The notes beneath the pieces were generated by a model. It saw only the letters and a list, made by a program, of their open reading frames with translations, searched no databases and was not told the origin of the DNA. Shown here piece after piece: positions 28,346 through 55,172 of a stretch of 64,000 bases of DNA. Numbering within the stretch: the stretch's first letter is position 1; the number at the start of each line of letters is the position of its first letter. Source of the stretch: Octopus bimaculoides (lineage: Eukaryota); assembly GCF_001194135.2 (NCBI RefSeq), contig NC_068987.1:3287008-3351007 (forward strand), in the 5' to 3' direction. Made by a program: the position numbers and the translations under genes.

Positions 28346-28483
28346 AATTCTGGGTTACATTGGCTAGGAATTTCAAGACGTTTATCAGACATGAGATGGT
28401 CGAGCAGTTCTTGCCGACTCATTTCACCATAAGGTACTCCTCCAACAGTAATTATTTCCCAAAGTAACACACCATAAGACCAT
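28346..28483 (-). CDS. Kinase exon 6 (138 nt, phase 2-2): WSYGVLLWEIITVGGVPYGEMSRQELLDHLMSDKRLEIPSQCNPE(L)
   Basis: Subdomain IX-X motif WSYGVLLWEI; atttcag|A acceptor, TT|gtgagt donor. Confidence 0.94.
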
Positions 28484-28865
28484 CTGAAATTATAAAGCAA
28501 CAGTTAGTATTATTCTTTGACAACTTTTTACAAGTAAATTATTATCATGAAATATTATTGTAGTAAACAGAAAAATAAAGACATTTTAAGAGTAAATTTA
28601 ATCTAAGTTGGATATAAAAATTTATGTCGTTTTTGATTCTGGACCAAATGACCTGTGAGATTTATGACATTGCAGTCATGTTTCAGATCTTTGTGATATC
28701 TTTGAATGGCTAACAGACTTGGTTATTTATAGTTGAGTTTCATGGACACAGTGTGCAACTGGAGACAGAATATGAACCATTGACCATTGGAATACTTGAA
28801 GTGAGAGTATTATTATTTTTATTATTATTAGTTTGTCTATTGTTGACAATGACAAAGGACATTAT

Positions 28866-29132
28866 TTGGGAGAAGACGAAGGGCCACAGTGTGTCCAGCT
28901 GTGGCCAATCAGTCCAATGCTTTCTGAGAAGGCTCTGCCACAGGTCCAGGCACTGGTGGTCTGTTGGGACTGAAAGCAAGGAGCTGGCTCTGGACTTGCA
29001 TAGTCCATGTTTTCTTTGTGCCCCTGCAATCCCATTCTGCTCATAAGAGATGGTGCCTCTATTGCTGCAGCTTCAGTGGTCTTGTGCTTGCATTTCCCAG
29101 GTGCCACTGTTGATCTCAAAGCTCTTCAGGGA
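28866..29132 (-). mobile_element. RTE-clade LINE 3' fragment (C-terminal zinc-finger region)
   Basis: EAAAIEA...WTCGRAFSESIGLIGHSWTH matches the RTE/BovB-type CxxCxRxFxxxIGLxxHxRxH end. Confidence 0.75.
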
Positions 29133-29308
29133 GGCTTGGAGTAAATGAGAGTAATAAGCAGTAATCAGTGGGTTCAAAGTTATTGCCTCCTTAAAAAACA
29201 GGACACAGTATCATGGGCAACCTTTTCGAGAAGCAGACTGCATGAAACAGGGCTCAACATCAGGCAAGCCACACTACTAAAACAATCAAGTAACTTTCCG
29301 TTAGTCAT

Positions 29309-29536
29309 GTCATTCAGAGAGTCATTCAGAGAGTCATTCAGAGAGTCATTCAGTGAGTCATTCAGTGAGTTATTCAGTGAGTCATTCAGAGAGTCATTCA
29401 GTGAGTCGTTCAGTGAGTCGTTCAGAGAGTCATTCAGAGAGTCATTCAGTGAGTCATTCAGAGAGTCATTCAGTGAGTCGTTCAGTGAGTTGTTCAGAGA
29501 GTCATTCAGAGAGTCATTCAGAGAGTCATTCAGAGA
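29309..29536. repeat. 12-bp VNTR, 19 units of GTCATTCAG(A/T)GA
   Basis: Units counted directly; three TGAGTCA junction motifs. Confidence 0.95.
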
Positions 29537-29636
29537 GTCCTGCAGGTCAAAGTTGATTTATGCTAACTCAGTTTATTTAATAATTTTAACATATTAAGAA
29601 ATTTAGAATTATATACATATTAAAGTTTTAACTTAC

Positions 29637-29701
29637 AAATCACTCATAGTACTTGTCCAACCTGTTTTCAGTGTTTCAATTGCTTGCCACTTATATTCGT
29701 C
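29637..29701 (-). CDS. Kinase exon 5 (65 nt, phase 0-2): DEYKWQAIETLKTGWTSTMSD(L)
   Basis: KWQAIETL matches Tie/RET KWMAIESL; tgtttcag|GAC acceptor, TT|gtaagt donor. Confidence 0.9.
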
Positions 29702-30169
29702 CTGAAACAAAACAATCAATAAATGAAAAACAATTTCTCCCAGATCAACATTTTGTTTTTAGGTATAAAAAAAATTTGCGAATTTTCAAAATATTTAATC
29801 TGAACTGATAATCCAGTATAAACAAAAGATAATCTCATTAACCTGAAAAGAGAAGGAAAATGAAGGTGGGGTCCACTGTTTGTATCCTCTCTTATATTCA
29901 CCAACTTGTTAAACGATGATGATGATCATGATGATGATGATGATGATGATGATGATCCCTTCATCAGAGACAATGTGAGAAAATGATTAAGCAATAGTTA
30001 ATTTAGATAAGATACGAAATAGAGAGTAAAGTGGAGGAATGAAAATAGATGTGAGATATGCAGGGATATTGCATTTGTAGATCCATTATTTAGGCAGAAT
30101 GGTATACATATAAGATTCCTATACCATTTTCTTTTTCTTTTTGAATAATTAGGCCATTTTTTCTGGAAC

Positions 30170-30487
30170 AAAAAGCAAATTTGCACAATTTTCTTATTCC
30201 AGTTCAAGCTAGGCCGTAAAGCTGCTGAAACAGCTCGCAATATCAACGATGCATTTGGCCCAGGAACCACTAATGAACGTACAGCACAATGGTGGTTCAA
30301 GAAATTTTGTAGTGGTGACGAGAGTCTTGAAGATGATAAGTGTAGAGGTCGGCCATCAGATGTTTACAATGATCAACTAAGAGCCTTAGTCGAAGCCAAT
30401 CCATGCACAACTGTTCGAGAGCTTGCTTCTGAATTAGACGTCATGTATACGACAATTTCCAATCACTTGAAAGAGATTGGAAAAAAA
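30170..30487 (+). mobile_element. Mariner (cecropia/Hsmar1-like) transposase N-terminal fragment
   Basis: KKQICTIFLFQFKLGRKAAETARNINDAFGPGTTNERTAQWWFKKFCSGDESLEDDKCRGRPSDVYNDQLRALVEANPCTTVRELASELDVMYTTISNHLKEIGK, stop-free but truncated. Confidence 0.92.
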
Positions 30488-30797
30488 TATGTGCATCTGA
30501 ATTTAAAGGTTAAAAACCGTAAGAACTTTCTTGACAACCTAATAGATAAACCAAGGCTTATATTTTTTTAAGAAAAATAAGAAAATGGAGAAACATCAAT
30601 TAATAAGTATATTTGTTAACTAAAAAAATAAACATGATCTCTAACAGCTGTTATGATTCATACTTTAAAGATTATAATTGTATTAATTAAATCATTTTAT
30701 AAAGCAGAATATCCTCTGAGGCAGAAAAAAAAATTATACCAGTGTATTATTAGTTGTTAATTACATGGAACATTAACAGCAAATAATATATACATAC

Positions 30798-30896
30798 CTT
30801 CATTACGGCTGGTTTTGTGAAACCAAAACCTCCAATTTTGGCACGTAATATCTCATCAAGGTATATGTTCTGTGCACATAAATTACCATGGATTGT
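30798..30896 (-). CDS. Kinase exon 4 (99 nt, phase 0-0), catalytic loop and DFG region: TIHGNLCAQNIYLDEILRAKIGGFGFTKPAVMK
   Basis: Aligns to IHRDLAARNxLV...KIxDFGL with HRD>HGN and DFG>GFG; ttccag|ACA acceptor, AAG|gtatgt donor. Confidence 0.93.
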
Positions 30897-31051
30897 CTGG
30901 AAATGAAAATACTTAGCATGAATATGAAACCCAGAGGAGAGTAACATCACAAACAGACACGGAAATGACAGTGCTCAATAGCTGTAGTTACTGAGTCAGT
31001 TGGGAAGATGTGAACAAGATCTCAAACCTCTGGCATGCTGTAATGAGTCTG

Positions 31052-31210
31052 GGACATTTACCCCCTAGGGACAATAACCCACCAAGGACAATTACCCCCG
31101 AGGACAACAGATGATGATTTAAAACTTCTTAATATATTGGAGAGGGGGTAATTAACCAAGGGGGATAGTTGTTGTTGGGGGTAGTTGTTGTTGGGGGTAA
31201 TTGTCCTGAT
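31052..31210. mobile_element. Small fold-back/MITE-like element with inverted arrays of GGACAATTACCCCC
   Basis: ggacatttacccc, ggacaataaccc and ggacaattacccc on the left; gggggtaattgtcc-type units on the right. Confidence 0.55.
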
Positions 31211-33267
31211 ATGGTTGTAATATCTCTCGTAAGATCCTAAACTGCTGAGATACTGATGCAAGGCAATCAATAGTTTTGATTTTGCGGTCCATCATCAAAG
31301 AATCCCACCCACCCAAAACCATGGTCATGCTATTGTTTCTTGCTAATTTTCAAATACTTTACATAAGATACAAACTTGTTACCAGTTCAAAATATGCTTG
31401 AGACATATTTGAACCATCCACAAAATAGCCATCCACTGTATTTTGTCACAGATAACATTTCTCAACATAGACAAATAGGAGTAAAAACACTGGGTCAGTT
31501 CACAGTGCTTGCAACCCCTGTATTTTACACAAGATACACGTCCGGGCTTATAAACATGGTCTCTAGATGGTTCTTACCAGTAACTGTCTATGCTTAGAGG
31601 CATTTGTTCAAGAAGTCCACAGAGAAAACTTGGGCTAACATTGATTTGTATTATGAAAGCGGCAAGAATTGATCTGAATATAATTACAACTAGTTCAATA
31701 GCAACATGCTGTCTCTTGTGTTGGATGTAAAATATATTGACAAAATGGTTCTTCATCATAATTACTCTGCTGTCGATTATTTACAGCATAACCTTTGTCA
31801 CACATTGTTATAGGGACAGACTGTGCACTGCACTATGGCAAGGTACCCAGCAGCATCTACTGAAATATTAAAAAAGCCTTGGAATCTCTCCTTAACCCTT
31901 TCCTGTTTAGACTGGCCAAAATTTTCTACCAGTTTTATGTTCAAACTAGCTAGATCCAATGTTTCACACCTACCCTACAATGTCATTCTAAAACTAGACT
32001 TACATAATTTATTGTATAGTGAAATTGTACACCCTCCCAGTAAAAATTGGTAGTAGTCAGCCATTATAAATAAACCAGTAGCCAGTTGTCAAGAGAAGGT
32101 TGAGAAGGTCGAGAGTATGTGTGGACTGTGTTGATAGTTGTGTCTGTGCTGATATAGTAATCATACTGTGATATTGAATGGACGTTATAAACGATCCAAC
32201 CTTTTGAGGATAATAACACTGTAGGACTGGGGGTCATACAGTGCCAGATAAAAACATTCTATTGACGACTTTAGAATATAACAATCTCTGTCAGAGCGAC
32301 AACCATCGTCAAAAGACAGATACAAAAGTGGCAAAAAGAGCTCTTTACAACATAATTGAAATCTTGAAGCTACGAGATGATGCACAATTAATTTAAAACA
32401 ATGTGGATAAATAAACATTATATTTGACATAGTAACTGGAATGTGAAAGGGTTAACGCTACACCAATACTCGTCAATAATTGGTCGTTATTAATGACTGA
32501 TGTACCATTTAAACCTAGCTATTAGGTACGGTATTATTGCTCACTATGAAGACAGTCAATGGCTGCAGCTTTCAGCTCTCAATAAACTTCTTAATTATAT
32601 TTCTCTGTAGAAACTATCCATATCAATTATCTCAAAGATAATAGATTACCAATCCTAATATCTTATGATATTTTTGGAGAATTCTGTGGTGGTTATTTTA
32701 CTGCTAGAAAATTACATTTTCTCATTCAACAATGCAGAAACAAGCTACACATTTTCAGTAATCAAAAGAAGAACCATTCTATTTTTTTTTTTTTATATAT
32801 GAATTAGAGTGATTACTGAGATGGCAATATTGACTGGGTCGTATCTCCCTGGAGCAAATCAGTTTTGTCAAATTCCATTAGTTCTAGAAGTTTAGATATT
32901 GAAAAGTAGAGAAAAAACAAACAGTAATAACAAAAGAAAGAAGACAATAAAAATATATGCATTTGTGGTAGTATTTTAACAAAACCAAGGTACCTAAAAC
33001 CTATTTTGAAGTGGTGGGCATTAGGAAGGGCATCTAGCTGAAGAAACCACAGCGAAACAGACATTGGAACTTGGAGCAGTCCTTTGACTTGCCAACTCCT
33101 GTCAAACCATCCAACCCATGCCAGCATAGAAAACGGGCATTAAATGACAACACATAATGATGATGATGATAATGATGATGATAATGATGATATCTATAAT
33201 ATTTCAAACTAACTAAAGAACATGTTAGTATAAAAAAATAGGTGCAAACAATAAATTTATTAAATAC

Positions 33268-33440
33268 CTGATGATTAGAAAGATATAGCAAGCCACAGGC
33301 AATTTCAGCGGCAATATATAGCAATTTCACTTGGAAGAAAACCAAAACGTTGGGTTCTTTGTCTGTTCCTTTACGCATCTTTAACAAGTAAGATCTTAAA
33401 TCTCCACTTTCAGCATAATCCAGGGCAATGTAATGCCGGT
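33268..33440 (-). CDS. Kinase exon 3 (173 nt, phase 1-0): DRHYIALDYAESGDLRSYLLKMRKGTDKEPNVLVFFQVKLLYIAAEIACGLLYLSNHQ
   Basis: Hinge YIALDYAESGDLRSYL and alphaE IACGLLYL; catcag|AC acceptor, CAG|gtattt donor. Confidence 0.93.
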
Positions 33441-33649
33441 CTGATGAATATTAGGAATGGTAAAATGCATAAACAAGTCATGAATTTTAAACAGTAACAA
33501 TAGATAATGAATAAAAGTGATTACATGTAAAATAAACATCATACTTGTATCATAAAAGAAAACTTTTCCATATCTACTTTTATTATTATTATCACCATTA
33601 TTATTATTATCTATTATTATTATTATTATTGTTATCATCATCATCATGA

Positions 33650-33958
33650 TAGCACGTAGAAAGCACCATTGGTGTGTGGCCCATGCCAGTGGTGCCTGAC
33701 TGGCACCCGTGCCGGTGGCATGTAAAAAGCACCATTGGAGTGTGACCGATGCCAGTACCACCTGACTGGCACCCGTGCCATATATTCATCACGTAAAAAG
33801 CACCCCCTATACTCTTGGAGTGGTTGGCATTAGGAAGGGCATCCATCTGTAGAAACCTTGCCAAATCAGATTCAAGCTTGGTGCAGCTTCCTGCTTGCCG
33901 TCCAACACATGCCAGCATGGAAAGCGGACGTTAAACGACGACGACAATGATGATGATG

Positions 33959-33960
<2 letters not shown>
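33650..33960 (+). mobile_element. Family C retroposon with internal approx. 65-bp tandem units and (GAT)n tail
   Basis: gcacc...gatgccagtgg/accacctgactggcacccgtgcc units, then ggttggcattaggaagggcatcc tail. Confidence 0.8.
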
Positions 33961-34007
<47 letters not shown>

Positions 34008-34013
<6 letters not shown>

Positions 34014-34330
34014 TCACTGCCTGGAATCGAACTCGGAATCTTGGGGTTAGTAGCCCGCGCTCTTAACCACTATGCCATATGCCCCAAGATTCCAAGTTCA
34101 ATTCCAGGCAGTGGCCTGAATAATATTAATAACAACAACAGCAACAGCAGCAACAACAACAACAAATACCTTAAGAATGAAAACCCAGGTTCGAAATTTC
34201 CCCAAGACACCTGATGAAGGCTGGAGGGTATATCAACCGAAAAGTTGTGTTAACAACAAATAAGAGGAGGACAAGTATCCGTCAAATGTAAATAATGTAC
34301 ATAATTCTTCATCTCTCAAATATAGAACTG
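34008..34330. mobile_element. Head-to-head fold-back copy of the tRNA-head/Penelope-tail composite, with degenerate hammerhead (34206-34251, +)
   Basis: 34008-34046 is the reverse complement of 34082-34120; tail matches 6258-6395. Confidence 0.78.
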
Positions 34331-34376
34331 TATAATTTTAAAGTATCTGAAAATAAAATAAAATAGAATTACAAAC

Positions 34377-34487
34377 CATTAGCTACAGCATCAGTTATAA
34401 AACTGAGGATGTTAGGATGCTGCCCAAGCGCTTCGGCCATAGCTTTTGCTTCCTTTAAATCTCCTCTTTCGTCATCGGATAAACCAT
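34377..34487 (-). CDS. Kinase exon 2 (111 nt, phase 1-1), alphaC-beta4: DGLSDDERGDLKEAKAMAEALGQHPNILSFITDAVAN
   Basis: LGQHPNIL matches RTK LGxHPNII; ttttacag|AT acceptor, G|gtttgt donor. Confidence 0.9.
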
Positions 34488-35633
34488 CTGTAAAATAAGA
34501 GGAATATAGATTATGATTTTGATATTGGTAAAATACAAGATGCAATCAAAATGAATAAAGAAATTACTTAGCCAACCAAATGCCAGTTGTTTGTTGTATT
34601 TCAAGTGAATTGCTTACGGACATTGCATTTGAAGAGGTGTGATTAACGATATTTAGTCGTTAAAGGTTGTCATTATTAGCTCTGGTTAATTCTAGAGGAC
34701 ATTTTAAGTCATAAATCGCAATTTTTAAACTACAAAAATATCGACTGTTTTGAAAACGTTTTTTTGTTTGTTTTTTTTTTGCATTTCCCATCAAAATATC
34801 ATTCATTGATATTTCATACACCTTCGCATTTGATACTATAGTTTCAAAAAAAACTAAAATGTTTATTATTTCAATTGAATAGAAAAGGATAAATATGCTT
34901 GTTTTTCAGTGATCCACATTTGGGACTTTTCGGAAAATTTATCATACTTTCCAAAAGAATTCACATATGAAGAAAATTTAAATACTATATATTATTCTAA
35001 CCCCCAAGACACCTGGCAAATCCAAAAAATGTAAATAAAAGAATTTGGCAGTTAATGGGTTAACAACACAGCTGAATCTACACCTCATGGCTAGAATAGT
35101 AATTACATGTTTTGTTTTGTTCAATAGAAACAAACACAAGGCATTTTGGTTTAGCCTTCTTGCTTGTTCTCCTTTTCAGTGACTAGTTTCAGTTATTGGA
35201 TTACAGCCAAGACACGTCACAGCCGACAGAGACCATCACCATCTCCTCCCCGCCACCACTGTTGCCGCCATCACCACCACCTCTTCAACAGTGTTTCAGG
35301 AACACGTTTATTTAATCAATCTATATTTTATTGATTAGTTGAGTTACCATATTCTGACACAAAGCAGCTTATTTTTCACAAAAGCCATTGTGTCAAATGC
35401 ATAAACACAAACATGGAATACCACAAGCGAAAACATGTACGCTTGTTTGTGTGTGTCTATACACACACACACACACACACACATAAACATATATAAAGAC
35501 ATACACACATAAACGTACATAAAAACATACATAACATAGATATATATATGTATACGTATATGTGTGTGTGTGTATGCATATCTATTCATCTGTATTATAT
35601 TATCTATATTAAATGTATGTGCATGTGTATGTT

Positions 35634-35691
<58 letters not shown>

Positions 35692-35955
35692 CACTCACAC
35701 ATACACACATACATAAATACAAATATATATATATATATAATATAGATAAATCGATAGATAGATAGATAGATAGATAGCAAGAGAGATAGCTAGATAGATA
35801 GATAGATAGGTAGAGAGAGAGAGAGAGAGAGAGAGATATGCATACACACACAAACACAACTATGCTTCTGCACAGTTTCTGTCAACCACATTCCACACAC
35901 ACTCTCTCTCTCTCTCTCTCTCTCTCTNNNNNNNNNNTCAACCACATTCCACACA

Positions 35956-36012
<57 letters not shown>

Positions 36013-37546
36013 CCTCTCATACAGAGGAGATTCATTGTCATATTCAGTGCAGCACATTTTGACTGTTGTCGTCACAGTGGCACCTTGTGAGCATGCCAAA
36101 GTGTCTCCTCTCTCCCACACAAAGATGCAACAAAAGATCTCAATTAAATTAATAACGAGCTGTTGTTAAGGCAGTGAGTGAGATGGCAGGATCCCCAGCA
36201 GACTGGGCAAGATGCTTAGCAGCATTTCATCTGTCACTAGGTTCTGAGTTCAAATTCTGCTGAGGTTGACTTTTCCTTTCATTCTCTCGGGGTCGATAAA
36301 ACAAGCACCAAATGAACACTTACCCACTTCCCCAAAAAAATTGCTGGCCTTGTGCCAAAATTTGAAACAATGGCAAGAGTGGATGGTACCTCTCTAAATG
36401 TACACCAGTGAGTCGGAGAGAAGGAATTGGAGAGGGTACTTGCTCCAGGGGTTACAGGGAAATCTCAGACAGTGGGGTTCCTCGATTATCCCTAGAGGCC
36501 TTCCTGTATCGGAAGATATGGAATCTCCATGAGAACTACATTAAGGGTACACATGTCAATGGGGTGCTGAACCCCTTGCATGTTAATGTCACAAGCAGGC
36601 TGTTCCGTTGATCAAATCAGCTGGAAGCTTCATCATTGTCATAACCGACAGATTGCTCAGCCTTGTCTATGAGGAGAGAAAATACCCAACATTGCTTTAC
36701 TCAGTAATGCCCAAGGTAAAACTATCAGGTGCATTGAGGATAAAGATACAGCATAATCTACTGATCAGAATCTCAATTTGGTTCCTTAGCAACCATTTCT
36801 GCTAGCCATCACATTCATGTTTTCAGTATTAAGCTTTGCCTTCTTCCCTATGAACAAGTTTGATTGATTTTTAATCTGTTCCTTCATTTCATCTTATCTT
36901 TTCACTTACACCCCTCCCAACTTTAATTTATATTCATTTCTCTCTCTCTCTCTCTCTGCCTTTGTTCCTTCTTCCTTCTTCTACCTCACTTAAAGAAAGT
37001 CTTTTTATTATTATATTTTTCTCCTTCTAATTTTCTGATAACAGTCTCAGCCGAAGTTACAAGACCTATTCTCTTTGGCAAACGAATATACTTCATTTTT
37101 TAAAATCTTTCCACTGCATCGATTCTTAATGATGCTAAGCTCAGTAAATCATACCAAATTATATTGATTACATTTGTTTCGTTCATGCTGATTGATAAGG
37201 AACCGCTTCTTGCAGTATTTCAACAATTCAGATTGTTAAAAAGACTGATAAAAATAATTGAAAACTTAAAAGAAAAATCAAATAAAACAGTAAAAAAATT
37301 AATCATTATTAAGCTGTTTCATTTATGATAAAATAAATAAAAATAGGCATAAAATAATAATGATGATGGTTTTATTAACTGTGGCAATGGTTAAAAGCTT
37401 GCTTCCAAAATATGTGGTCTTGAGTTCAGTCCCACTGCATGGTACCTTGGGCAAGTGTTTTCTACTATAGCCCCAAATCAAACAAAGTCTTTTGAATGAA
37501 TTTGGTAAACTACAACTAAAATTGTGTATATGTATGTGTGTGTATA

Positions 37547-37578
<32 letters not shown>

Positions 37579-37594
37579 AATCAAAATGGAAGTT

Positions 37595-38020
37595 GTAGTT
37601 ATGGCTGATGCCAGTGCCACCTGAATGGCTCCTGTGCTGGTGGCATGCAATAAGCACAATTCATGCGTAGGTCATTGCCAGTGTCACCTGACTGGCTCCC
37701 CATGCTGGTGGCACGTAAAAAGCACCATCTGAACATGATTGATGCCAGTCCCCCACACCAACTGGTTCCTGTGCCAGTAGCACGTAAAAACCACCATCCA
37801 AATGTGGCCGATGCCAGTGCCACCTGACTAGCTCCTGTGCCGGTGGCCCATAAAAAGCACCCACTACACTTTTGGAGTGGTTGGCATTAGGAAAAGCATC
37901 TAGATGTAGAAACTTTGCCAAATTAGATTGGAGCCTGGCACAGCCTTCTGGCTTGCCAGTCCTCAGTCAAACCGTCAAACCCATGCCAGCATGGAAAATG
38001 GACATTAAATGATGATGATC
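37595..38020 (+). mobile_element. Family C retroposon with four approx. 67-bp tandem units
   Basis: Units start near 37601, 37667, 37735 and 37804; family C tail follows. Confidence 0.82.
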
Positions 38021-38290
38021 ATAATAATATATATGCATGAATGTATGTGTATGTCTGTTTGTGTGTAGTCTTGTCTTGTTATCATGTGATGGCTGTAAAT
38101 GAGCATCACTGTCATGCAAACGAGGTTGTTTGTATCAAGTCTTTCATGCAAAATAGGTCTGGCCACGGGGAAATATTACCTTGCTTGGAAAGAGGTGAGG
38201 GTTGGTGACAGGAAGGGCATCCAGCCACAGAAAATCTGCCTCCGTAAATTCTGTATGACCCATGCAAGCACGGAAAAAAATGGATGTTAA

Positions 38291-38327
<37 letters not shown>

Positions 38328-38403
38328 CGACAACAACGATGACAACAATGACAACCATAAAATTAGAATGACAACATAAGAAGAATTTAAATAAAAGCCT
38401 CAC

Positions 38404-39393: not shown

Positions 39394-39578
39394 CTTGTCA
39401 TCTGTGACTTCTGGTGCTTCATCATCCCGTGTGATGATAGTTTTATCTTTTTTCTTTTTGCTCACCAGCAACATAATAGCCATTAAGATGATACAAGTGA
39501 AAGTAAATAATCCAGTGAAAACTGCCAGAGCTATGGCCAAATTCTTCATGAGTTTTCGATAATCTTCTGCTAGTAATC
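39394..39578 (-). CDS. Transmembrane exon (185 nt, phase 1-0): RLLAEDYRKLMKNLAIALAVFTGLFTFTCIILMAIMLLVSKKKKDKTIITRDDEAPEVTDDK
   Basis: About 26-residue hydrophobic stretch followed by a KKKK stop-transfer cluster; cgttcag|GA acceptor, AAG|gtaggg donor. Confidence 0.92.
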
Positions 39579-39993: not shown

Positions 39994-40057
<64 letters not shown>

Positions 40058-41174: not shown

Positions 41175-41312
41175 GTTTGTCGCAAACACTGCCAATGTAT
41201 CCACCCAAACAGCCATCAGGGCATGTTCCGTTGAAGGGATTGCATGTTTTATTATTGGCACAAAATCCACAGACAGTTGAGCAGTTGAAGCCATAAAAAC
41301 CAGGCTCACATT
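41175..41312 (-). CDS. EGF-like exon 9 (138 nt): ECEPGFYGFNCSTVCGFCANNKTCNPFNGTCPDGCLGGYIGSVCDK
   Basis: 8-Cys module; tttag|AA acceptor, C|gtaagc donor. Confidence 0.93.
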
Positions 41313-42094: not shown

Positions 42095-42235
42095 CTTCAG
42101 TGCACATATCTCCAGTCCATCCATTTTCACAATGATTTTTGGGACAGAAACCTTCCACAGAGTCACAAGTTACTCCGTCTTTGCAGAAACCACAATAGTA
42201 GGAACAGTTTAATCCAAAGGTGCCATGTTCACAAT
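42095..42235 (-). CDS. EGF-like exon 8 (141 nt): YCEHGTFGLNCSYYCGFCKDGVTCDSVEGFCPKNHCENGWTGDMCTE
   Basis: 8-Cys module; gaccag|AT acceptor, G|gtaaga donor; absent from the ORF track. Confidence 0.92.
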
Positions 42236-43645: not shown

Positions 43646-43677
<32 letters not shown>

Positions 43678-44689: not shown

Positions 44690-44740
<51 letters not shown>

Positions 44741-45206: not shown

Positions 45207-45344
45207 AAAGTGAGCAGTTTGCGCCTCTCCAGCCTGTCTGACAACTGCTAACACACACACCAGTTGATTTATTGCAAACTTCGCTCTCATCAATACAACG
45301 GCATTTCTCTTGACAGTTTGGTCCAAAGGTATAATCATCACATT
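45207..45344 (-). CDS. EGF-like exon 7 (138 nt): ECDDYTFGPNCQEKCRCIDESEVCNKSTGVCVSSCQTGWRGANCSL
   Basis: 8-Cys module; ttccag|AA acceptor, T|gtaagt donor. Confidence 0.93.
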
Positions 45345-45823: not shown

Positions 45824-45894
45824 GGTCATTAAATATTAAAAGAAAGAAATAAAGAAAACTAAAATTGATAAAAAAAAAACTGAAACAAATGCCT

Positions 45895-46490
45895 GGTCTT
45901 GTTTAGAATGAAAAAAGATAATTTTTTCCCCTTGGTTCATATCAAACTTGGCTTGAAGAAACAGTCCATGAAGATCTTAAATACTGAGAGTCCTTATTTT
46001 CAATATATGGTTTCTGCTTTTCCTGCTTTGTCTTTGAAGAAGATCAAAACAAGTGTGTTCAATGGTGCTTACATTCATGCTCTTGTGTTGAGACAAGGAA
46101 TTTGTTTGGAAAACAGATGACAAGGAGAAAGCAGCATAGTTGTCTTTTATGGCACATGTATGAAACTTTTGGGGGAACAACAAGGCAGAGAACTACAAAA
46201 TTATGTTTACTAGAATGCTGCTGGCTTTTCACAATCTTGGATGCAACACGAGTGTCTGGTTCCATTTCCTGAACAGTCACTTTGATCAATTCCCAGAGAA
46301 TCTTGGGACTGTAAGTAATGAACAAGGAAAGGGCTTTCATCTGAGCCTCATAACCATAGAAGAGCACTACCAAGGGCAATGGCAGAAAATATGGTGGCAG
46401 ATTCCTGCTGGAGCATCAAATTGGATTGCCCTGAAGGAGTCCACAAATGCAAAATCTATAAGTGCAAACTTGCCTGAATAGCACCTATCG
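45895..46490 (+). mobile_element. Degenerate DNA-transposase C-terminal fragment of a widespread invertebrate family (superfamily not assigned)
   Basis: PLVHIKLGLKKQ...FPALSLKKIKTSVFNG and frameshifted LGCNTSVWFHFLNSHFDQFPENLGTVSNEQGKGFH...EEHYQGQW. Confidence 0.75.
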
Positions 46491-46844
46491 GAATTTTGTA
46501 TTCCATCTTTATCAATAGTTCTGAATCACTTATCAGCTTTATGCCCCAGGGTCCCAGGACATGCATCAGTTGCACACCCACCCTATGCCTTCCAGAATAA
46601 GTTGCAGGCTTATTTTTGGTTATACTGGCATTGAGTGGAGACTGCAATATATTTTTTGAATGAACCCCTCTCCCTAAGATTTGAACTAGTCCCTTGTTGA
46701 CCTGCATGACAGAAGGTGCAATATGATTATTCTTTCAAACCCTTTTTCATATTTGTAGATTTTGGTGTCTTATTCTCACCGGGCACCAAGTTGTCACTTA
46801 ATGACAACCTTTGTAGCTAATTAAAATAGAAAGTTTACAAATAA

Positions 46845-47005
46845 ATGCAGGAGTGGCCGTGTGGTAAGTAGCTTGCTTACCAACCACATGATTCCTGGTT
46901 CAGTCCCACTGCATGGCACCTTGGGCAAGTGTCTTCTACTATAGCCTTGGGCCAACCAAAGCCTTGTGAGTGGATTTGGTAGAAGGAAACTGGAAGAAGC
47001 CCGTC

Positions 47006-47041
<36 letters not shown>

Positions 47042-47255
47042 GTGTGTATATGTTTGTGTGTGTCCCCAACATCACTTGACAACCAATGCTGGTGTGTTTA
47101 TGTCCCCATAAGTTAGCAGTTCGGCAAAAGAGACCGATAGAATAAGTACTAGGCTTACAAAGAATAAGTCCTGGGGTCGATTTGCTTGACTAAAGGCAGT
47201 GCTCCAGCATGGCCGCAGTCAACATGACTGAAACAAGTAAAAGAGTAAAAGAGTA
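46845..47255 (+). mobile_element. Full-length tRNA-derived SINE, family B
   Basis: tRNA-like head (A/B boxes), body, (TA/TG)n and tail ending gagtaaaagagtaaa, about 20 nt from the EGF6 donor. Confidence 0.85.
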
Positions 47256-47274
47256 AATATGTAATTAACATTAC

Positions 47275-47412
47275 CTTCATTGCAATGACCACCTTGGAAA
47301 CCTGGTTTGCAGCCTATTTTGCAATAACCATTATACCATTCACAGACGCTGTCAATGCAGTTGGGATTGCAAGTTTTATTACAGTCAGGTCCATATGTTC
47401 CAGCATAGCATT
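47275..47412 (-). CDS. EGF-like exon 6 (138 nt): ECYAGTYGPDCNKTCNPNCIDSVCEWYNGYCKIGCKPGFQGGHCNE
   Basis: 8-Cys module; acag|AA acceptor, G|gtaatg donor. Confidence 0.93.
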
Positions 47413-47630
47413 CTGTCGAAAAAACATTTAAGAAATTGTAACAAATTACACAAGTTATATGTAATACATCTAATATATTCTCGTTAGCTAAATAACACAT
47501 CATAACAGGTAAAGTAGAGTTAAGTAATTTCAAAGCAGAAACATAATAAAAAAAAATTTCTTTTAGGTACAAACGCAAAAAATTATTATTATTATTATTT
47601 TTATTACTAATATTATTACTATTATTATTA

Positions 47631-47758
47631 TTCAGGTCACTTCCTGGAATCGAACTTGGAATCTTGGGGTTAATAGCCCGTGCTCTTAACCACTACGCCA
47701 TATGCCCATGGGGATATGGCGTAGTGGTTAAAAAACGTAAATAATGTAAATAATGTAC
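47631..47758. mobile_element. Fold-back remnant of the tRNA-head/Penelope-tail composite
   Basis: Reverse head plus a 21-nt palindromic turn (47687-47730) and the aatgtaaataatgta tail remnant. Confidence 0.7.
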
Positions 47759-47893
47759 CTAGCATACAGCCACTTCTCTCTCTACTCTACTCACACTCAG
47801 TTTAAGGGTTAACTTTAATCCTGTGAGATAAGATGATGACTTCATCGGTGCCGGTGCCATGCAAAAAGCTAAAAGACAAAAGATACAACTTGC

Positions 47894-48034
47894 CTTCGTC
47901 ACATTTGTCTCCTCGGTGTCCCTGGATGCATCCTGACATGCACTTGCCTGTTATGCGGTCGCATTTTTGATTCTTACAATAATGGCTGCAACGTTTCTTG
48001 CAGCTAAATCCATAACGACTGGTTTCCGCACAAT
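47894..48034 (-). CDS. EGF-like exon 5 (141 nt): DCAETSRYGFSCKKRCSHYCKNQKCDRITGKCMSGCIQGHRGDKCDE
   Basis: 8-Cys module; ctgaag|AT acceptor; phase-1 donor is non-canonical GAAG|gcaagt. Confidence 0.88.
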
Positions 48035-49317
48035 CTTCAGAAGCAAAAGTAAAGAAAAAAAAAAGACATTCCATGAACTACTTTTAAACATTTAAATTTC
48101 AAGAAAAGAATTAAAAAAATTTGGCAAAATATTAAGAAATCAGTGAAAGTGACAAATTAGGAACTTGTCCCAACCCCCTCCAAAAATCAATAAAATGGAT
48201 ACAGATAACAAATTCTTGAATGAAATTTGTTTATTTTAATAATTGTTCAATATTAAAACTTTAAATGTATCTCTGAGTTTAGCCATTAAGCCTCACCAGC
48301 ATTTTGTTCGGTTGCTTTGTCTCATTAATTATTTCACTTAATTATTATTGATAAGTTTTTAAAAATTTTTCTGTAATTTCAGCTCAGAGCTGTGGCCATG
48401 CTGGAGCACCGCCGTTTAATAATTAAACAAGAACAGATGTTATAAATTTGCAAAATCTAGTCATTATCCTTCATTTCTAAAACATAAATCATGTATAATA
48501 ACGACTGAGTTCATTAAATTATCAGTTTTTTAAATTTTAAAAATTTATACTGTGTATTAATAGTGGTACATGATGCAGGTTGGGACAGTTACGCATGTAG
48601 CGTATATGGCGCACGATGTGGTTAAAGTGCTAAGTTAGGAAATCCAAAGTTATTTTAGCAATGTGTTTGTGGATAGTTAATGGGTTGGATGTAATACTGA
48701 CGAAAGAGCAAGAACTTTTGAAATAGGTATATACACCCAATGCCTATTTTTCTAGCTTTGATCGCATTGTTTGCATAGATGTATTCGTATATGAAACATT
48801 GTTTCTTTCAGTACTGGCTCTAAATTTTATAGACAATCTGTAGAGACACCCTTAAAAAAAATGTTAGCTGATGCCATTGAAGATTAGCTCATAACCACAC
48901 AGTTTGTTACTTGAGTGGATTCTTAACAATCGTAACTGAAAAGTATGGACGACGTATTTCTAAAGCATCTGGATCTTTTGTTATATTTCTTGCAGGGATG
49001 TTAAGGATTTGGCAGCAATAATATCACAAGTTGAATCTATTTTAAATATGTTCTATTCTTGTATTGTAGCAAAGTATTACACTCTTATGACTGTCTGGAA
49101 ACAACAGAGAAAGCCCAGGGTTACAATAAAAATCTCTTACCCAAGGTGTCGACAGTAGGATTGAACTTGAAACCACATGGTTTGGAAGTGAACATTTTCA
49201 TCATACAGCATTACCTAAGTCTGTATATGCCTGAATATTTATTTATTTAAAACATAGTCTTGCTTTGGAATAAGACTCAGAGGATATCCTTCAAAGTTAT
49301 TGGCATCATCTACTAAC

Positions 49318-49455
49318 CTTCTTGACAATCTTCTCCTTTCCAACCTGGCGCACACAAAGTGCGGCATCGGCCAGATTTCTTGTCACATGATTCACTTTTA
49401 TCCCGGCATCGGCAATCCTTTGTGCAATTAATTCCAAATTTAAAATCTTCACATG
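49318..49455 (-). CDS. EGF-like exon 4 (138 nt): ACEDFKFGINCTKDCRCRDKSESCDKKSGRCRTLCAPGWKGEDCQE
   Basis: 8-Cys module; tttacag|CA acceptor, G|gttagt donor. Confidence 0.93.
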
Positions 49456-50749
49456 CTGTAAAAACAATTCAAAAATAAAAACAATACATTAACAACATAA
49501 ATATATATATATATATATATATATTCTTTTATTCTTTCATTTCTACTTGTTTAAGTCATGCTGGAGCACCACCTTTAGTCAAACAAATAGACCCAGGACT
49601 TATTCTTTGTAAGCCTAGTACTTATACTATTGATCCCTTTTGCTGAACTTCTGGGGATGTAAACACAACAACATCAGTTGTCAAGTGATGGTGGTGGTGG
49701 TGGTGGGGAGTTAAAATAAGGACAGAACCAATTATTTCTTCCAATGGAAAGAAATTATAAGATTACACACACACTTTCTTTATAATTTAGGGGAAAAAGG
49801 ATGGAAATTAGTTTTAAGAATTTTCCCATCAGTTTTTCTTTTCATTTTGTATACACACTGTCAGTAGGCCAGTTATTGCAGTATTTGTCCTGAGGTAACT
49901 TCTCAGATGGACATGTTGTGTTAAAAACACAATAAATATCAGAGGCAGAAGAAAATTCATCCTAGCAACAACCAGCAAGAACACCAGATGCATTTGGGTC
50001 TTTTGCGGCCTTTACAATGGTGCATATTCACAGCCAGCCACATATTCAGATGAGAATCTGTTACTTCAGAAATAGGGAACAGTGACTAAGACATTCACTG
50101 ATGTGAATAGCTGTCTGGCTGAATACGAATCTGGTATACACAATTGAGGCAGTATTAAATCAAAATAGTTATCTATATATCATACTTAATGTATACACAC
50201 TGCCAATAGAATAGTCTAATTACTGCAGTATTTGTTCTACCAACTACATATTGTAATGTACCTAAAACATTCAGTAAAACTGGGAAAAATCAAAATTCTG
50301 AGTTCAAGATGTGTTAAGGCAAGTAGAATTCTTAAGCCCCAGTACAAAACTGGTACTTATTTCATCGACCCCGAAAGGATGAAAGACAAAGCTGACCTCA
50401 GTAACATGAACTCAGAATGTAAAGACGGACGAAGTGCCACTAAACATTTTGTCCAGCATGCTAACGAGACTGCCAGCTCACTGCCTTAATTTTGGAAATA
50501 ATTAAAAATCTATTAAAATAACTTTGTCATTATTAGTCAGGTGTTGGAACATAAATTAACATAAAATTTGGGACATAAATTAACATAAAATTTTGATAGA
50601 AGGCTTTAATTTCGATCCCTTTAAAATAGGGAATCTTTATCATAGAAGAAAGGGCAACCTCAGGCAAGTTGGTATCAAAAGGGTTAAGTTGTGCTGAATG
50701 AGATGAGAAATTACAATAAAGATATTTTTAAAAATTGGTAAAAGCTCAC

Positions 50750-50887
50750 CTTGCTGGCAATTTTCTCCAAGCCAACCTGCTGAACAACCACTCTTACACA
50801 CTCCAGTTATTTTATCACATCTTTCTTCTCTTTTTTTGCAGTGACATTTTTTAGAACACCTCTCTCCAAACCTGGTAAAATCACATT
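50750..50887 (-). CDS. EGF-like exon 3 (138 nt): ECDFTRFGERCSKKCHCKKREERCDKITGVCKSGCSAGWLGENCQQ
   Basis: 8-Cys module with C-x-C; ttcag|AA acceptor, G|gtgagc donor. Confidence 0.93.
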
Positions 50888-51413
50888 CTGAAGTAATAAA
50901 AGATAGTTTGTTTGTCTTTTTTTTTTAAAGATAAGAGAAATTATTCTAAAATTTAAACATTTCAAAATTCAAAAACATATTCTAAATCAAAATTAACTTT
51001 AACCCTTTAACATTTAAGACTGCCAAATCTGGCCCCAAACATTCAACCATTTTATGTTCAAATGCTCAGACACCTAACACAATATATAGCAAAAGCAACT
51101 TTTTGCTTAATACAAATGAAAATGGAATAATATATCAGGTAGTGTTTGGAAATTTTGAAGGAATCGTTTTAATGAAAATTATATCTGGGAACAAAGAATC
51201 ACAGAAAAAAAAAAGCCCTCAGTGATTTAGAATTCATACATTTGAAACGACTTGCCATTAAGCCTGCAACTACAAACAGAACAAGCTGGATTCAATAAAA
51301 AGAATACATGTGACTAAAGATTAAAGACAATACAAATACTGAAAAGAAAAAAATAAACAAATAATCAATCATATTAATCATAATTTGTAATAGATTGGTA
51401 AGTTGATCGTTAC

Positions 51414-51551
51414 CTTCATTACACTTCTTTCCCTGGAATCCTGGTTTACATCCAGAGTGACAACTACCATTATTTGAAAAGCAGCCTGGTATTATACACA
51501 TAGGACTACATGTCTTAGTGCATCCTTTACCATATTTTCCATCGGGGCATG
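51414..51551 (-). CDS. EGF-like exon 2 (138 nt): ACPDGKYGKGCTKTCSPMCIIPGCFSNNGSCHSGCKPGFQGKKCNE
   Basis: 8-Cys module; gtag|CA acceptor, G|gtaacg donor. Confidence 0.92.
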
Positions 51552-52159
51552 CTACAACACGAAAATAAGGGAGTGATTTACATTTTTTTTTTACCTCAGT
51601 GAGAAATGTAACATGTAGATAAGGATTAATGGATTGTGGCTGCAGGTTAATGAGGAGAAAGACTTGAGCAAATGACAGGTAGGAGAAAGACAATATTTAA
51701 GGAGCAGAGGTCACTGTAGTAGCTATAGAAAAAGCAGTGAGAGGGGGCAACATGTTTGTTGGGCAGAGGTTTAGTGTGTCTGTCAGGGACTTTATGCAAA
51801 TTAGTTGAATGGCCTTCCTTTGGGTGAAGTCTAGAATGTCTATATATATATGTGTATAGCATCAGCAGCAACATCCCAGATGTGGGAGCAGTATTCCCCT
51901 TGTGGACCTCACTTGAATTTCATAAAGGATCAGTAGTTGTTGGCCCCGAAGAGGAATGCCAATCTTTGTGATAAAGCCTATAAGTTGAGGATATGGATTT
52001 GGCAGGAAGATAACCAGTAATGGTGAAACCTAGCATGTGTAGTGACCTTGGAGTTCTTAGTGGGATGTTGTTCATATATAGCTGGGGTGAAAGACAGGTA
52101 ATGAGGGGAAAGACAGGTAATGTTCTATGTGTCGAGAATGTGTCTTTGTGCTGCATGAG

Positions 52160-52480
52160 GGCGCATGACTAAGTGGTTAGGGCATGCTGGCATGGGTTGG
52201 ATGGTTCGACTGGGGTCTGGAAAGCCAGAAGGCTGTACCAGGCTCCAATCTGATCTGGCAGAGTTTCTACAGTTGGATGCCCTCCCTAACACCAACCACT
52301 CTGAGAGTGTAGTGGGTGCTTTTCTTATGTGCCACCAGCACAGGAGCCAGAGGGGGCTGGCATCGATCACAATTGGATGGTGCTTTTCATGTGCCACCGG
52401 CATGGAAGCCAGTCAAGGCGGCGCTGGCATCAGCCACATTCGGATGGTGCTTTTTACATGCCACCGGCACAGGGATCACA
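52160..52480 (-). mobile_element. Family C retroposon with two internal units
   Basis: Reverse complement of 33650-33960. Confidence 0.8.
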
Positions 52481-53490
52481 TCTACAATTTCCATTTGATT
52501 GTGATTTGATTTGATTTTGATGTACTTGACTCAATAAGTCTCCTCAAGCATGGCATGTCGCCCTACGATCCAAGCTACTTTTTGAGTGGGCTGGTTATGC
52601 GACACTGGTGTAGGTTACAGCTGTGAACTCACTTTATTTGATAAATAGGTAATACAAGTGAATAATGAGAGTTAGATACAAAAATATTGTATACTGTAAG
52701 TGGAGGGTTCTTGAGAGGGAGAAAAAATTACTCTTGGAAGGAAAGAATAAGGTCAGATCTTGGAATATGAGAAAAGAAGGAAAGGATTGGCAATAAGCTA
52801 TATGTCAAACTCGTCAATCGCATGTCAACATGGAAAAATGGACATTAAAATAATGGTTATGATAATGATGAGTTTTAATGAATTCTTTGCCACAAATAAT
52901 TACAAAATATTGATTACATTTGAATTCTTGTTGCATCTCTTAATATGAGAAGGAAGGAATGTATAGCCTTAAGGCAGAACTGATTGATTTACTGGTGTAA
53001 TAGATTGAAGAGAACTGCTATTTCTAAAAATATAAAATTTCAAAAAAAAAAACCAACCTTACGAAGCAGCTCCAGGTTCAAGAAAATGAGAATAGTAACA
53101 AAATATCAAATGACTCTAAACTAGTTTGATTGTCATGTTACAGAAAAGGATGATACAGTGGAAATGTTTTATCAAATTTCAGGACAAAAGAATGTAAATT
53201 TGAAAATGTTTAAAGCAAAAGGGAAGAAGTGAGAAAAGAATGTTTCATTTATTTTATGACTGTTATGTTTGTCTTCCACCTTAACAGCTTGGTATTACAC
53301 CATTCCTTGCTTTACAAAAAAGAGAAAATTCTATAGAATTACTTCTCACGAGTCCAGTTGATATCTGGTTATTTTATGTAAAAAGCCGTAATGTAGGTTG
53401 AATGGTTGAACATTAAATCAATAAAAAAAGAAAGGTAGAAAGGAATGAGGTGGAGAAATGTTTTAAATATAAATATACAATATCAACAAA

Positions 53491-53682
53491 GAAAAAATGG
53501 ACTAATATCTGTTGTAATTTGGTTATCTATAGTCCGATGATATTTCGGAATTACAATTCCTTCTTCAGATCTTCTTAGATGGAGTCTCTGCTATAAACTG
53601 TTTTCCAATGGTTTTCTTTTTTTCCAAAATATCATCGGACTATAGATAACCAAATTACAACAGGTATATAGTCCATTTTTTG
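53491..53682. mobile_element. Penelope-type fold-back element, approx. 60-bp arms 53491-53550 / 53622-53682
   Basis: aaaaaatggactaatatctgttgtaatttggttatctatagtccgatgatatttcggaa versus ttccaaaatatcatcggactatagataaccaaattacaacaggtatatagtccattttt. Confidence 0.8.
53536..53571 (-). ncRNA. Minimal type-I hammerhead motif, sense to the receptor intron after EGF exon 1
   Basis: GAU-CUGAAGA-A-GGAAU(ugua)AUUCC-GAAA-UAU-C-AUC; palindromic AUAU helix III, AUC triplet, only 3-bp helix I. Confidence 0.62.
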
Positions 53683-53838
53683 TTTTATAGTGCATTGTTG
53701 TATCATTCTAAACTTTTTATTCTTTACAAACAACACACAATGCTTCAAGCAAATTACAATACTCTCCTATCAACAAAGAAGTTTTGTTTAAAACTCATTC
53801 ACGTATAATGAATTTTTGAAAGAACAAAGTCAACCTAC

Positions 53839-53979
53839 TTTGGTCGCATTTCTTCCCCCTGTACCCTGGCAGGCATCCTTCTGAACAATCTCCAGTATAT
53901 TCATCACATTTTCCTTTGTTACAGCTTTGTGGACAATCTTCGAGGCAATCAGGAGGTAGATAAGTTCCAATTGGACATT
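53839..53979 (-). CDS. EGF-like exon 1 (141 nt, phase 1-1): ECPIGTYLPPDCLEDCPQSCNKGKCDEYTGDCSEGCLPGYRGKKCDQ
   Basis: 8 Cys in laminin/MEGF10 spacing; acag|AATGT acceptor, A|gtaggt donor; absent from the ORF track. Confidence 0.9.

Positions 53980-55106: not shown

Positions 55107-55172
<66 letters not shown>

What the first reader, a model, noticed from the sequence alone, without database searches (positions are those of the whole stretch)
28346..53979. EGF-array receptor with a dead Tie/RET/FGFR-type kinase: candidate new receptor pseudokinase
Seen: one reading frame joins nine MEGF10/SCARF-type 8-Cys EGF modules, a single TM helix and a complete-looking tyrosine-kinase fold. The juxtamembrane segment has no Tyr, so no NPxY/ITAM as in Draper/MEGF10. 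Established: metazoan receptor pseudokinases (PTK7, ROR, RYK, ErbB3, EphA10/B6) use other ectodomains, and Tie receptors combine EGF with Ig and FN3. Inference: an EGF-array pseudo-RTK could be a lineage-specific decoy or co-receptor acting through an active partner.
Basis: partly seen in the sequence, partly recalled or inferred. Interest (0 to 1): 0.88.

Follow-up and report, generated by a model that had tools for sequence, protein, structure and literature searches.

The report
Octopus EGF-repeat receptor, dead kinase
This is a real, strongly conserved octopus gene for a cell-surface receptor with nine EGF repeats outside the cell and a kinase-like domain inside that has lost all three key catalytic residues; databases already hold it under misleading automatic names, but I found no paper describing it as a pseudokinase.

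Summary
On the minus strand, 16 exons with standard splice sites join nine 8-Cys EGF modules, one TM helix and a tyrosine-kinase-like domain. That domain has lost the β3 Lys (→Leu), HRD (→HGN) and DFG (→GFG).

The flagged gap at 35928-35937 lies in an intron and is harmless. A different gap (27099-27254) hides the penultimate exon, and the last exon lies at 23625-23584, outside the finding.

The window is Octopus bimaculoides, and the product is identical to XP_014773562.1 ("angiopoietin-1 receptor"). Orthologues with the same dead motifs occur in O. sinensis, O. vulgaris, Argonauta and cuttlefish, and full-length spliced transcripts exist.

The pseudokinase domain is the most constrained part. 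Its dN/dS is 0.02-0.03, and it is 90% identical between octopus and cuttlefish, against 67% for the ectodomain.

There are no Ig or FN3 domains, so it is not a true Tie. The architecture itself is not unique: a family found in bivalves, gastropods, a chiton and octopods has the same EGF-array ectodomain with an active Tie-like kinase.

The most likely role is a non-catalytic co-receptor or scaffold. This makes it a new, uncharacterised member of the receptor pseudokinases, of moderate interest.

The parts
53839..53985 (-). EGF exon 1 (8-Cys module). Its acceptor is in phase 1, so the signal-peptide exon lies upstream of the window.
   Evidence: 100% identical to XP_014773562.1
51414..51551 (-). 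EGF exon 2
50750..50887 (-). EGF exon 3
49318..49455 (-). EGF exon 4
47894..48034 (-). EGF exon 5, followed by a GC-AG intron (donor GCAAGT). The donor is also GC in O. sinensis and GT in Argonauta.
47275..47412 (-). EGF exon 6
45207..45344 (-). EGF exon 7
42095..42235 (-). EGF exon 8
41175..41312 (-). EGF exon 9
39394..39578 (-). Exon with the transmembrane helix (LAIALAVFTGLFTFTCIILMAIMLLV) and a Tyr-free juxtamembrane segment
38404..38572 (-). Kinase exon K1: degenerate G-loop NTGCFG and VALLIVK (β3 Lys replaced by Leu, codon CTA)
   Evidence: 91% aa but 78% nt identity in a decapodiform contig
35928..35937 (.). The flagged assembly gap. It is intronic (K1-K2 intron), inside a (CT)n microsatellite, and the same sequence is repeated on both flanks. 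It has no effect on the coding frame.
34377..34487 (-). Kinase exon K2 (alphaC region). Protein is identical in O. sinensis and Argonauta.
33268..33440 (-). Kinase exon K3 (hinge, shortened alphaD-alphaE insert, alphaE)
30798..30896 (-). Kinase exon K4: catalytic loop IHGNLCAQN (HRD replaced by HGN) and GFG in place of DFG
29637..29701 (-). Kinase exon K5: the rest of an activation segment that is 7 aa shorter than in the active family and has no invariant Tyr, plus WQAIE (the APE equivalent)
28346..28483 (-). Kinase exon K6 (WSYGVLLWEI ... CNPEL). Its phase-2 donor marks the end of the finding's span.
27099..27254 (-). Assembly gap that hides exon K7 (ESLIKNCWKENERERTPSDLMHEKLLEMASEGE in orthologues). 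The O. sinensis alignment resumes at 27098, a few bases after that exon's donor.
23584..23625 (-). Terminal exon K8: MYIAPTKEPRKRN then stop, after a tttcag acceptor. It carries the single conserved C-tail Tyr.

Best explanation
Exons 2-16 and the last exon of the Octopus bimaculoides gene for XP_014773562.1 lie here. The gene encodes a type I membrane protein: signal peptide, nine 8-Cys EGF modules, one TM helix, and a tyrosine-kinase-fold domain of the Tie/FGFR/RET group that is catalytically dead. The gene is shared by octopods and cuttlefish-type cephalopods.

Shown:
- the gene structure;
- loss of the β3 Lys, the HRD Asp and the DFG Asp in every orthologue;
- very strong purifying selection, strongest on the pseudokinase domain;
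- a preserved kinase fold;
- spliced full-length mRNAs in a decapodiform;
- an active paralogue-like receptor with the same architecture in octopods.

Inferred mechanism: the EGF array binds a ligand or a cell-surface partner. The pseudokinase domain does not phosphorylate. Instead it serves as a dimerisation or allosteric scaffold for an active kinase, and the active EGF-array receptor of the same animals is the obvious candidate, by analogy with ErbB3-ErbB2 or Tie1-Tie2. That partner would phosphorylate the one conserved tail tyrosine (EMYIAP) to recruit SH2 proteins. Alternative 3' ends, with or without this tail, would tune the output.
For: Gene model and dead motifs:
- Gene model with compatible phases; 100% identity to XP_014773562.1 over 732 aa.
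- Dead motifs NTG[CY]FG, VALLIV[KR], HGN and GFG are identical in O. sinensis, O. vulgaris, Argonauta and Acanthosepion.

Selection:
- dN/dS for the kinase domain is 0.032 against O. sinensis and 0.018 against Argonauta (dS about 1). For the ectodomain it is 0.096 and 0.068.
- Octopus versus cuttlefish amino-acid identity is 90% for kinase plus tail and 67% for the ectodomain.

Expression and fold:
- Thirteen transcript-sized contigs of 2-5 kb were found; the four fetched are 4.2-4.3 kb, come from four separate sequencing runs, and each carries an uninterrupted 823-aa ORF.
- AlphaFold2 gives pTM 0.69 with the full two-lobe fold. Foldseek matches FGFR1/3 and Eph kinases at TM about 0.72-0.85.
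- The HRD His and DFG Phe (regulatory-spine residues), the APE Glu, and the DxWSxG and CW motifs are invariant.

Link to the active family:
- An active receptor with an EGF-array ectodomain exists in O. vulgaris and Argonauta.
- All six kinase-domain intron positions and phases match between the two genes in Argonauta.
- The tail Tyr aligns with the pYxN Tyr of the active family.
- Isoforms with and without the tail occur in O. vulgaris and Acanthosepion.
Against: - No biochemical, expression or interaction data exist; the partner and the ligand are guesses.
- The kinase-domain NJ tree does not place the pseudokinase clade with the active EGF-array family (0 of 100 bootstraps). The branch is very long, so this placement is unreliable, and profile scores did not discriminate either.
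- Ectodomain similarity to the active family (243 bits) is only slightly better than to MEGF10-like proteins (227 bits).
- Some kinases lacking canonical residues still bind ATP or catalyse weakly.
- A-to-I editing could turn the HGN Asn codon (AAT) into Asp. It cannot restore the Lys (codon CTA) or the DFG Asp (codon GGT).
Confidence: 0.6

Rival explanations
1. Pure decoy or adhesion receptor: only the EGF ectodomain matters, as a ligand sink or a MEGF10/Draper-like cell-cell recognition module, and the intracellular domain is an inert remnant.
For: The ectodomain is of the MEGF10/PEAR1/SCARF module type. All catalytic residues are lost. There is no juxtamembrane Tyr, NPxY or ITAM.
Against: The intracellular domain is the most constrained part of the protein: dN/dS 0.018-0.032 against 0.07-0.10, and 90% against 67% identity between octopus and cuttlefish. 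An inert remnant would drift or be lost over that time.
Confidence: 0.1
2. Atypical but active kinase, comparable to WNK, to weak HER3 activity, or to an enzyme rescued by RNA editing, that still phosphorylates substrates.
For: The fold and the spine residues His and Phe are kept. Conservation is extreme. Coleoids recode many mRNAs by A-to-I editing (established knowledge), and the Asn codon AAT could become Asp.
Against: Three independent catalytic residues are gone, and the G-loop has lost its first Gly. Editing cannot recreate Lys from CTA or Asp from GGT. The activation loop is shortened and has no invariant Tyr. The AF2 model is least confident at the catalytic loop.
Confidence: 0.07
3. 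Ordinary Tie orthologue whose Ig and FN3 exons were missed, or a decaying pseudogene or annotation artefact.
For: Automatic names say "angiopoietin-1 receptor". Tie2 is the best PDB sequence hit. The first exon is outside the window.
Against: Full-length models in five species and the 4.3-kb mRNAs go from the signal peptide directly to EGF1. Pfam finds no Ig or FN3 in this protein, whereas a protein with the full Tie architecture (P0095) shows Ig_Tie2_1, Ig and fn3. There are no stops or frameshifts, and dN/dS is about 0.02-0.1.
Confidence: 0.03

Closest known systems
Molluscan EGF-array receptor tyrosine kinases. Automatic names include "angiopoietin-1 receptor-like", "TIE1", "Tie-1-like", "Ret-like" and "draper-like". 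Examples: Mytilus edulis XP_071120919.1; Argonauta and O. vulgaris P0238 and P0240.
   Same: Signal peptide, array of 8-Cys EGF modules (seven in the Mytilus member), one TM helix and a Tie-like kinase domain. One EGF module per exon. All six kinase-domain intron positions and phases are identical. A C-tail Tyr sits at the same aligned position.
   Different: Those proteins keep GxGxFG, VAVK, HRD and DFG, a juxtamembrane YEQ, an activation-loop DTYVK and tail YMN/YAEI motifs. The octopus protein has lost all of these except the one tail Tyr. Kinase identity to them is only about 31%, and the NJ tree does not group them.
Tie1/Tie2 (angiopoietin receptors)
   Same: Tie2 is the best solved-structure sequence match to the kinase domain (6e-28). 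Both have EGF modules in the ectodomain. The Tie1-Tie2 pair is a precedent for a signalling-poor partner modulating an active one (established knowledge).
   Different: No Ig_Tie2_1, Ig or FN3 domains. Tie1 and Tie2 are catalytically competent. Orthology is not supported by the tree.
Receptor pseudokinases ErbB3/HER3, PTK7/CCK4, RYK, ROR, EphB6/EphA10
   Same: Single-pass receptors with a conserved kinase fold that lacks catalytic residues. They act as allosteric or scaffolding partners of active kinases or other co-receptors (established knowledge).
   Different: Different ectodomains and different kinase subfamilies. This protein has lost Lys, the HRD Asp and the DFG Asp together, which is more extreme than HER3. 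It is restricted to coleoid cephalopods.
MEGF10/MEGF11/Draper/PEAR1/SCARF
   Same: Same type of 8-Cys EGF module array and single TM helix. Pfam matches are EGF_PEAR1L, EGF_laminin and EGF_STAB1-2. These are close ectodomain matches.
   Different: No EMI domain was detected. There is no NPxY or ITAM tail. Those proteins have no kinase domain.

Membership tests
Receptor (tyrosine) pseudokinase | Recognisable, complete protein-kinase fold | tested here: met
   Pfam PK_Tyr_Ser-Thr 4.5e-45. AF2 pTM 0.69 and Foldseek TM 0.72-0.85 to FGFR and Eph kinases, using the complete Argonauta orthologue.
Receptor (tyrosine) pseudokinase | Loss of at least one of the β3 Lys, the HRD Asp and the DFG Asp | tested here: met
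   All three are lost: Lys to Leu, HRD to HGN, DFG to GFG, in all orthologues.
Receptor (tyrosine) pseudokinase | Maintained by selection, not a pseudogene | tested here: met
   dN/dS 0.018-0.032 for the kinase domain. Spliced full-length mRNAs exist.
Receptor (tyrosine) pseudokinase | No phosphotransfer activity or nucleotide binding | not testable with these tools
   Needs recombinant protein assays.
Tie family (Tie1/Tie2) | Ectodomain of Ig (Ig_Tie2_1), three EGF, Ig and three FN3 domains | tested here: not met
   Pfam on the O. bimaculoides protein finds only EGF and kinase domains. A protein with the full Tie architecture in the same hit list (P0095) shows Ig_Tie2_1, I-set and fn3.
Tie family (Tie1/Tie2) | Kinase domain groups with Tie kinases | tested here: inconclusive
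   Tie2 is the best PDB hit. The NJ tree puts the clade on a long branch outside Tie and Tie-like groups. Profile scores do not discriminate.
Molluscan EGF-array RTK family | Signal peptide, 8-Cys EGF array, TM helix and a Tie-like kinase; one EGF module per exon | tested here: met
Molluscan EGF-array RTK family | Kinase domain inside the family's clade | tested here: not met
   The active clade has 100% bootstrap without the pseudokinases; the union has 0%. Long-branch attraction cannot be excluded.
Molluscan EGF-array RTK family | Shared kinase-domain intron positions and tail Tyr position | tested here: met
   Six of six intron positions and phases are shared in Argonauta. The tail Tyr column is invariant. 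These introns may be older than the family (PMC8662651 notes a shared phase-2 alphaH intron).
MEGF10/Draper/PEAR1 | N-terminal EMI domain, and a cytoplasmic NPxY or ITAM tail with no kinase | tested here: not met
   No EMI hit. No juxtamembrane Tyr. A kinase-fold domain is present.

The most novel reading that the evidence does not exclude
A receptor pseudokinase found only in coleoid cephalopods arose by duplication of the molluscan EGF-array receptor kinase. It now works as an obligate allosteric partner of that active paralogue, in the manner of ErbB3. Its pseudokinase surface has been almost frozen since before octopods and cuttlefish diverged, and a single docking tyrosine is switched on or off by alternative 3' exons. 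That would be a new receptor/pseudo-receptor pair tied to cephalopod-specific biology.
Probability: 0.3. Interest if true: 0.6.

Novelty: new member of a known kind. Interest (0 to 1): 0.42.

Why it matters
- It would add a family to the short list of metazoan receptor pseudokinases, with an ectodomain type (MEGF-like EGF array) not seen among the described ones.
- It comes with a natural active counterpart in the same animals, which makes the catalytic-to-scaffold transition directly comparable.
- Its intracellular domain is far more conserved than its ectodomain, which points to an important but unknown intracellular partner in coleoid cephalopods.
- Practically, the public names ("angiopoietin-1 receptor", "MEGF6") are misleading.
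- The O. bimaculoides RefSeq model has a wrong C-terminus caused by an assembly gap.

Tried and rejected
1. My first guess for the activation-segment exon (about 30428-30340, KQALEQLCMDWLRLRLL...) aligned without gaps to Tie2 but has no usable donor. Enumerating all phase-compatible exons gave the true K5 at 29701-29637, which the orthologues confirmed.

2. I first took an ORF at 27878-27764 (YRKSLVRCPTFQVLL...) as the last exon, which implied an 8-aa deletion of the CW...RP motif. The orthologues show this is intronic. The real exon is hidden in the gap at 27099-27254, and the terminal exon is at 23625-23584.

3. I searched 54000-64000 for a signal-peptide exon and found no convincing candidate. 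In O. sinensis intron 1 is 35 kb, which puts exon 1 beyond the window.

4. The word-indexed protein search with the kinase domain returned only one ORF fragment. The exhaustive HMMER search was needed to find the orthologues.

6. The NJ phylogeny and family-profile scoring failed to resolve the origin of the kinase domain.

7. RNA-editing rescue of catalysis was considered and rejected from the codons.

8. Six literature searches found no description of this receptor or of the molluscan EGF-array kinase family.


Full report
**1. What is in the sequence**

The window is AT-rich, repeat-rich animal DNA. The feature lies on the minus strand.

Stop-free segments and a tblastn with the first EGF exons revealed nine 8-Cys EGF modules and no further ones in the window. 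Each module occupies its own exon of 138-147 nt in phase 1-1. Downstream come an exon with a 26-residue hydrophobic helix and six kinase-domain exons.

With exact splice sites, 16 exons (53985 to 28346) join into 732 codons without a stop. All acceptors are AG. Fifteen donors are GT and one is GC (GCAAGT). Nine equally phased EGF exons followed by phase-compatible TM and kinase exons cannot be chance.

Pfam gives PK_Tyr_Ser-Thr at 4.5e-45, plus EGF_laminin, EGF_PEAR1L and EGF_STAB1-2.

**2. The gaps**

The flagged gap (35928-35937) sits in the K1-K2 intron, in a (CT)n microsatellite. The same sequence is repeated on both flanks, so it is probably an unmerged contig overlap. A collinear alignment to the O. 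sinensis locus spans it. It does not touch the frame.

A different gap matters. The O. sinensis exon ESLIKNCWKENERERTPSDLMHEKLLEMASEGE ends a few bases before the point where alignment with the window resumes at 27098. That exon is therefore hidden in the Ns at 27099-27254.

The terminal exon (tttcag | ATG TAT ATT GCA ... = MYIAPTKEPRKRN, then stop) is readable at 23625-23584. The gene therefore extends beyond the finding on both sides. In O. sinensis the signal-peptide exon lies 35 kb upstream of EGF1, which is outside the window here.

**3. Identity**

An exhaustive HMMER search of 1.84 billion representative proteins gave one close hit at 96% identity. Everything else was at or below 39%.

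The cluster holds these entries:
- Argonauta hians GAB1599948.1, "angiopoietin-1 receptor-like isoform X2"
- O. sinensis XP_029638806.2, "multiple EGF-like domains protein 6"
- O. vulgaris CAI9725145.1 and CAI9725146.1
- O. bimaculoides XP_014773562.1, "angiopoietin-1 receptor"

The window's 732 residues are 100% identical to the last of these, so the window is O. bimaculoides. That RefSeq model ends in CIEIEAKRIEISALLCEGHKSDIAKRLNVSRVTVHRVVERLRNREDLKDRP. This peptide maps to 7434-7586 and matches several helix-turn-helix Pfam families. It is a chimeric C-terminus created because the true exon is in the gap.

A search with the ectodomain added a cuttlefish orthologue, Acanthosepion pharaonis CAE1241733.1 and its isoforms. 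An unannotated ENA contig carries a K1 exon whose protein is identical to the cuttlefish one.

Thirteen Logan contigs of 2-5 kb carry the full-length protein. The four I fetched are 4.2-4.3 kb, come from separate sequencing runs, and each holds an uninterrupted 823-aa ORF running from the signal peptide through the nine EGF modules, TM helix and kinase to the YIAP tail. The gene spans 30-95 kb in genomes, so these are spliced mRNAs.

**4. Dead kinase, live gene**

The evidence comes from alignments to Tie2, to the active molluscan relatives, and from the codons:
- G-loop is NTGCFG.
- The β3 Lys is replaced by Leu (VALLIVK, codon CTA).
- HRD is replaced by HGN (Asn codon AAT).
- DFG is replaced by GFG (codon GGT).
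- The activation loop is 7 residues shorter and has no invariant Tyr; its one remaining Tyr (DEYKW) is Phe in O. sinensis and O. vulgaris.
- The juxtamembrane Tyr (YEQ in the active relatives) is absent.
- The alphaC Glu is ambiguous. A Glu lies one position before the aligned site.

These states are identical from Octopus to cuttlefish.

Selection is very strong. For the kinase domain, dN/dS is 0.032 against O. sinensis and 0.018 against Argonauta (dS about 1). For the ectodomain it is 0.096 and 0.068. Octopus versus cuttlefish identity is 90% for kinase plus tail and 67% for the ectodomain. Introns align at only 82-92% between the two Octopus species and did not align at all with the decapodiform contig, where only the two exons matched.

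An AlphaFold2 model of the complete Argonauta intracellular region has pTM 0.69 and all kinase secondary-structure elements. Its lowest confidence is at the catalytic loop and the insert. Foldseek matches FGFR1/3 and Eph kinases at TM 0.72-0.85.

A-to-I editing could make Asn into Asp. It cannot recreate Lys from CTA or Asp from GGT.

**5. Relatives**

A search with the Mytilus hit showed a widespread molluscan family with the same architecture and an intact kinase. It occurs in bivalves, gastropods, a chiton, and also in Argonauta and O. vulgaris. Its automatic names are wildly inconsistent: TIE1, Ret-like, EGFR-like, VEGFR2, draper-like.

In Argonauta the pseudokinase gene and the active gene share all six kinase-domain intron positions and phases. 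The pseudokinase's tail Tyr (EMYIAP) aligns with the family's QVYMN Tyr.

The NJ tree recovers the active family at 100% and the pseudokinase clade at 100%. It places the pseudokinases on a very long branch elsewhere, and profile scores were uninformative.

The origin, whether a coleoid duplicate of the active family or an older orphan, is therefore probable but not shown.

True Tie membership fails, because there are no Ig or FN3 domains.

**6. Mechanism**

The conservation pattern argues against an inert tail and therefore against a pure decoy. The loss of three catalytic residues argues against catalysis.

The best-supported reading is a non-catalytic co-receptor or scaffold. Its pseudokinase domain would engage an active kinase, with the active EGF-array receptor as the candidate. 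Its conserved tail Tyr, present or absent according to the 3' exon used, would serve as a docking site. This last step is inference by analogy with ErbB3 and Tie1.

**7. Novelty**

The gene models are public and the architecture is shared with an active molluscan family. I found no paper describing either the family or this pseudokinase.

It is a new, uncharacterised member of the receptor pseudokinases.

Noticed in passing
window 7434-7586 (-): The RefSeq O. bimaculoides protein XP_014773562.1 ends in a 51-aa peptide encoded here, about 21 kb downstream of exon K6. The peptide matches several helix-turn-helix Pfam families and sits among other short unclassified ORFs, which suggests a transposon remnant. 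It is a chimeric C-terminus caused by the true exon lying in an assembly gap.
   Followed up: yes
window 27099-27254: This 156-N gap hides the penultimate coding exon (alphaH-alphaI of the kinase fold). In O. sinensis the corresponding interval is about 3.2 kb, so the estimated gap length is much too short.
   Followed up: yes
window 35876-35990: The 10-N gap is flanked on both sides by the same sequence (tcaaccacattccacacacac(tc)n). It looks like an unmerged overlap of contig ends in a microsatellite.
   Followed up: partly
window 47882-47893 (-), intron after EGF exon 5: This is a GC-AG intron (donor GCAAGT). The donor is also GC in O. sinensis but GT (GTAAGT) in Argonauta.
   Followed up: yes
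L002 101110-101240; O. vulgaris X2 and X3 isoforms; Acanthosepion P0163 versus P0198: Two kinds of 3' end exist. Splicing to the last exon gives the tail with the conserved Tyr (MYIAPTKE[PS]RKRN). Reading through the donor, or using another exon, gives a short tail without it.
   Followed up: partly
proteins P0167 (O. vulgaris), P0170, P0181, P0245: Molluscs also join the same MEGF-type EGF array to a tyrosine-phosphatase domain (PF00102). The same ectodomain type is therefore paired with a kinase, a pseudokinase, a phosphatase, or a Draper-like tail.
   Followed up: no
proteins P0003-P0034: Many top-scoring hits from ENA assemblies are long proteins with 2-10 tandem tyrosine-kinase-like domains and no TM helix or EGF. 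Some domains carry HGN, HGD or HCD in place of HRD. Their organisms are unknown.
   Followed up: no
window 30300-30440 (-): An intronic ORF (KQALEQLCMDWLRLRLLVDHCKHLMADL) aligns without gaps to the Tie2 activation segment purely by chance. It has no usable splice donor. It is a caution for reading exons by eye.
   Followed up: yes
window 33600-34250, 37600-38400, 57000-57500, 63650-64000 and elsewhere: Introns and flanks are full of copies of the same short interspersed repeat, which has many matches across the O. sinensis locus. They also contain long microsatellites and eight N gaps.
   Followed up: no
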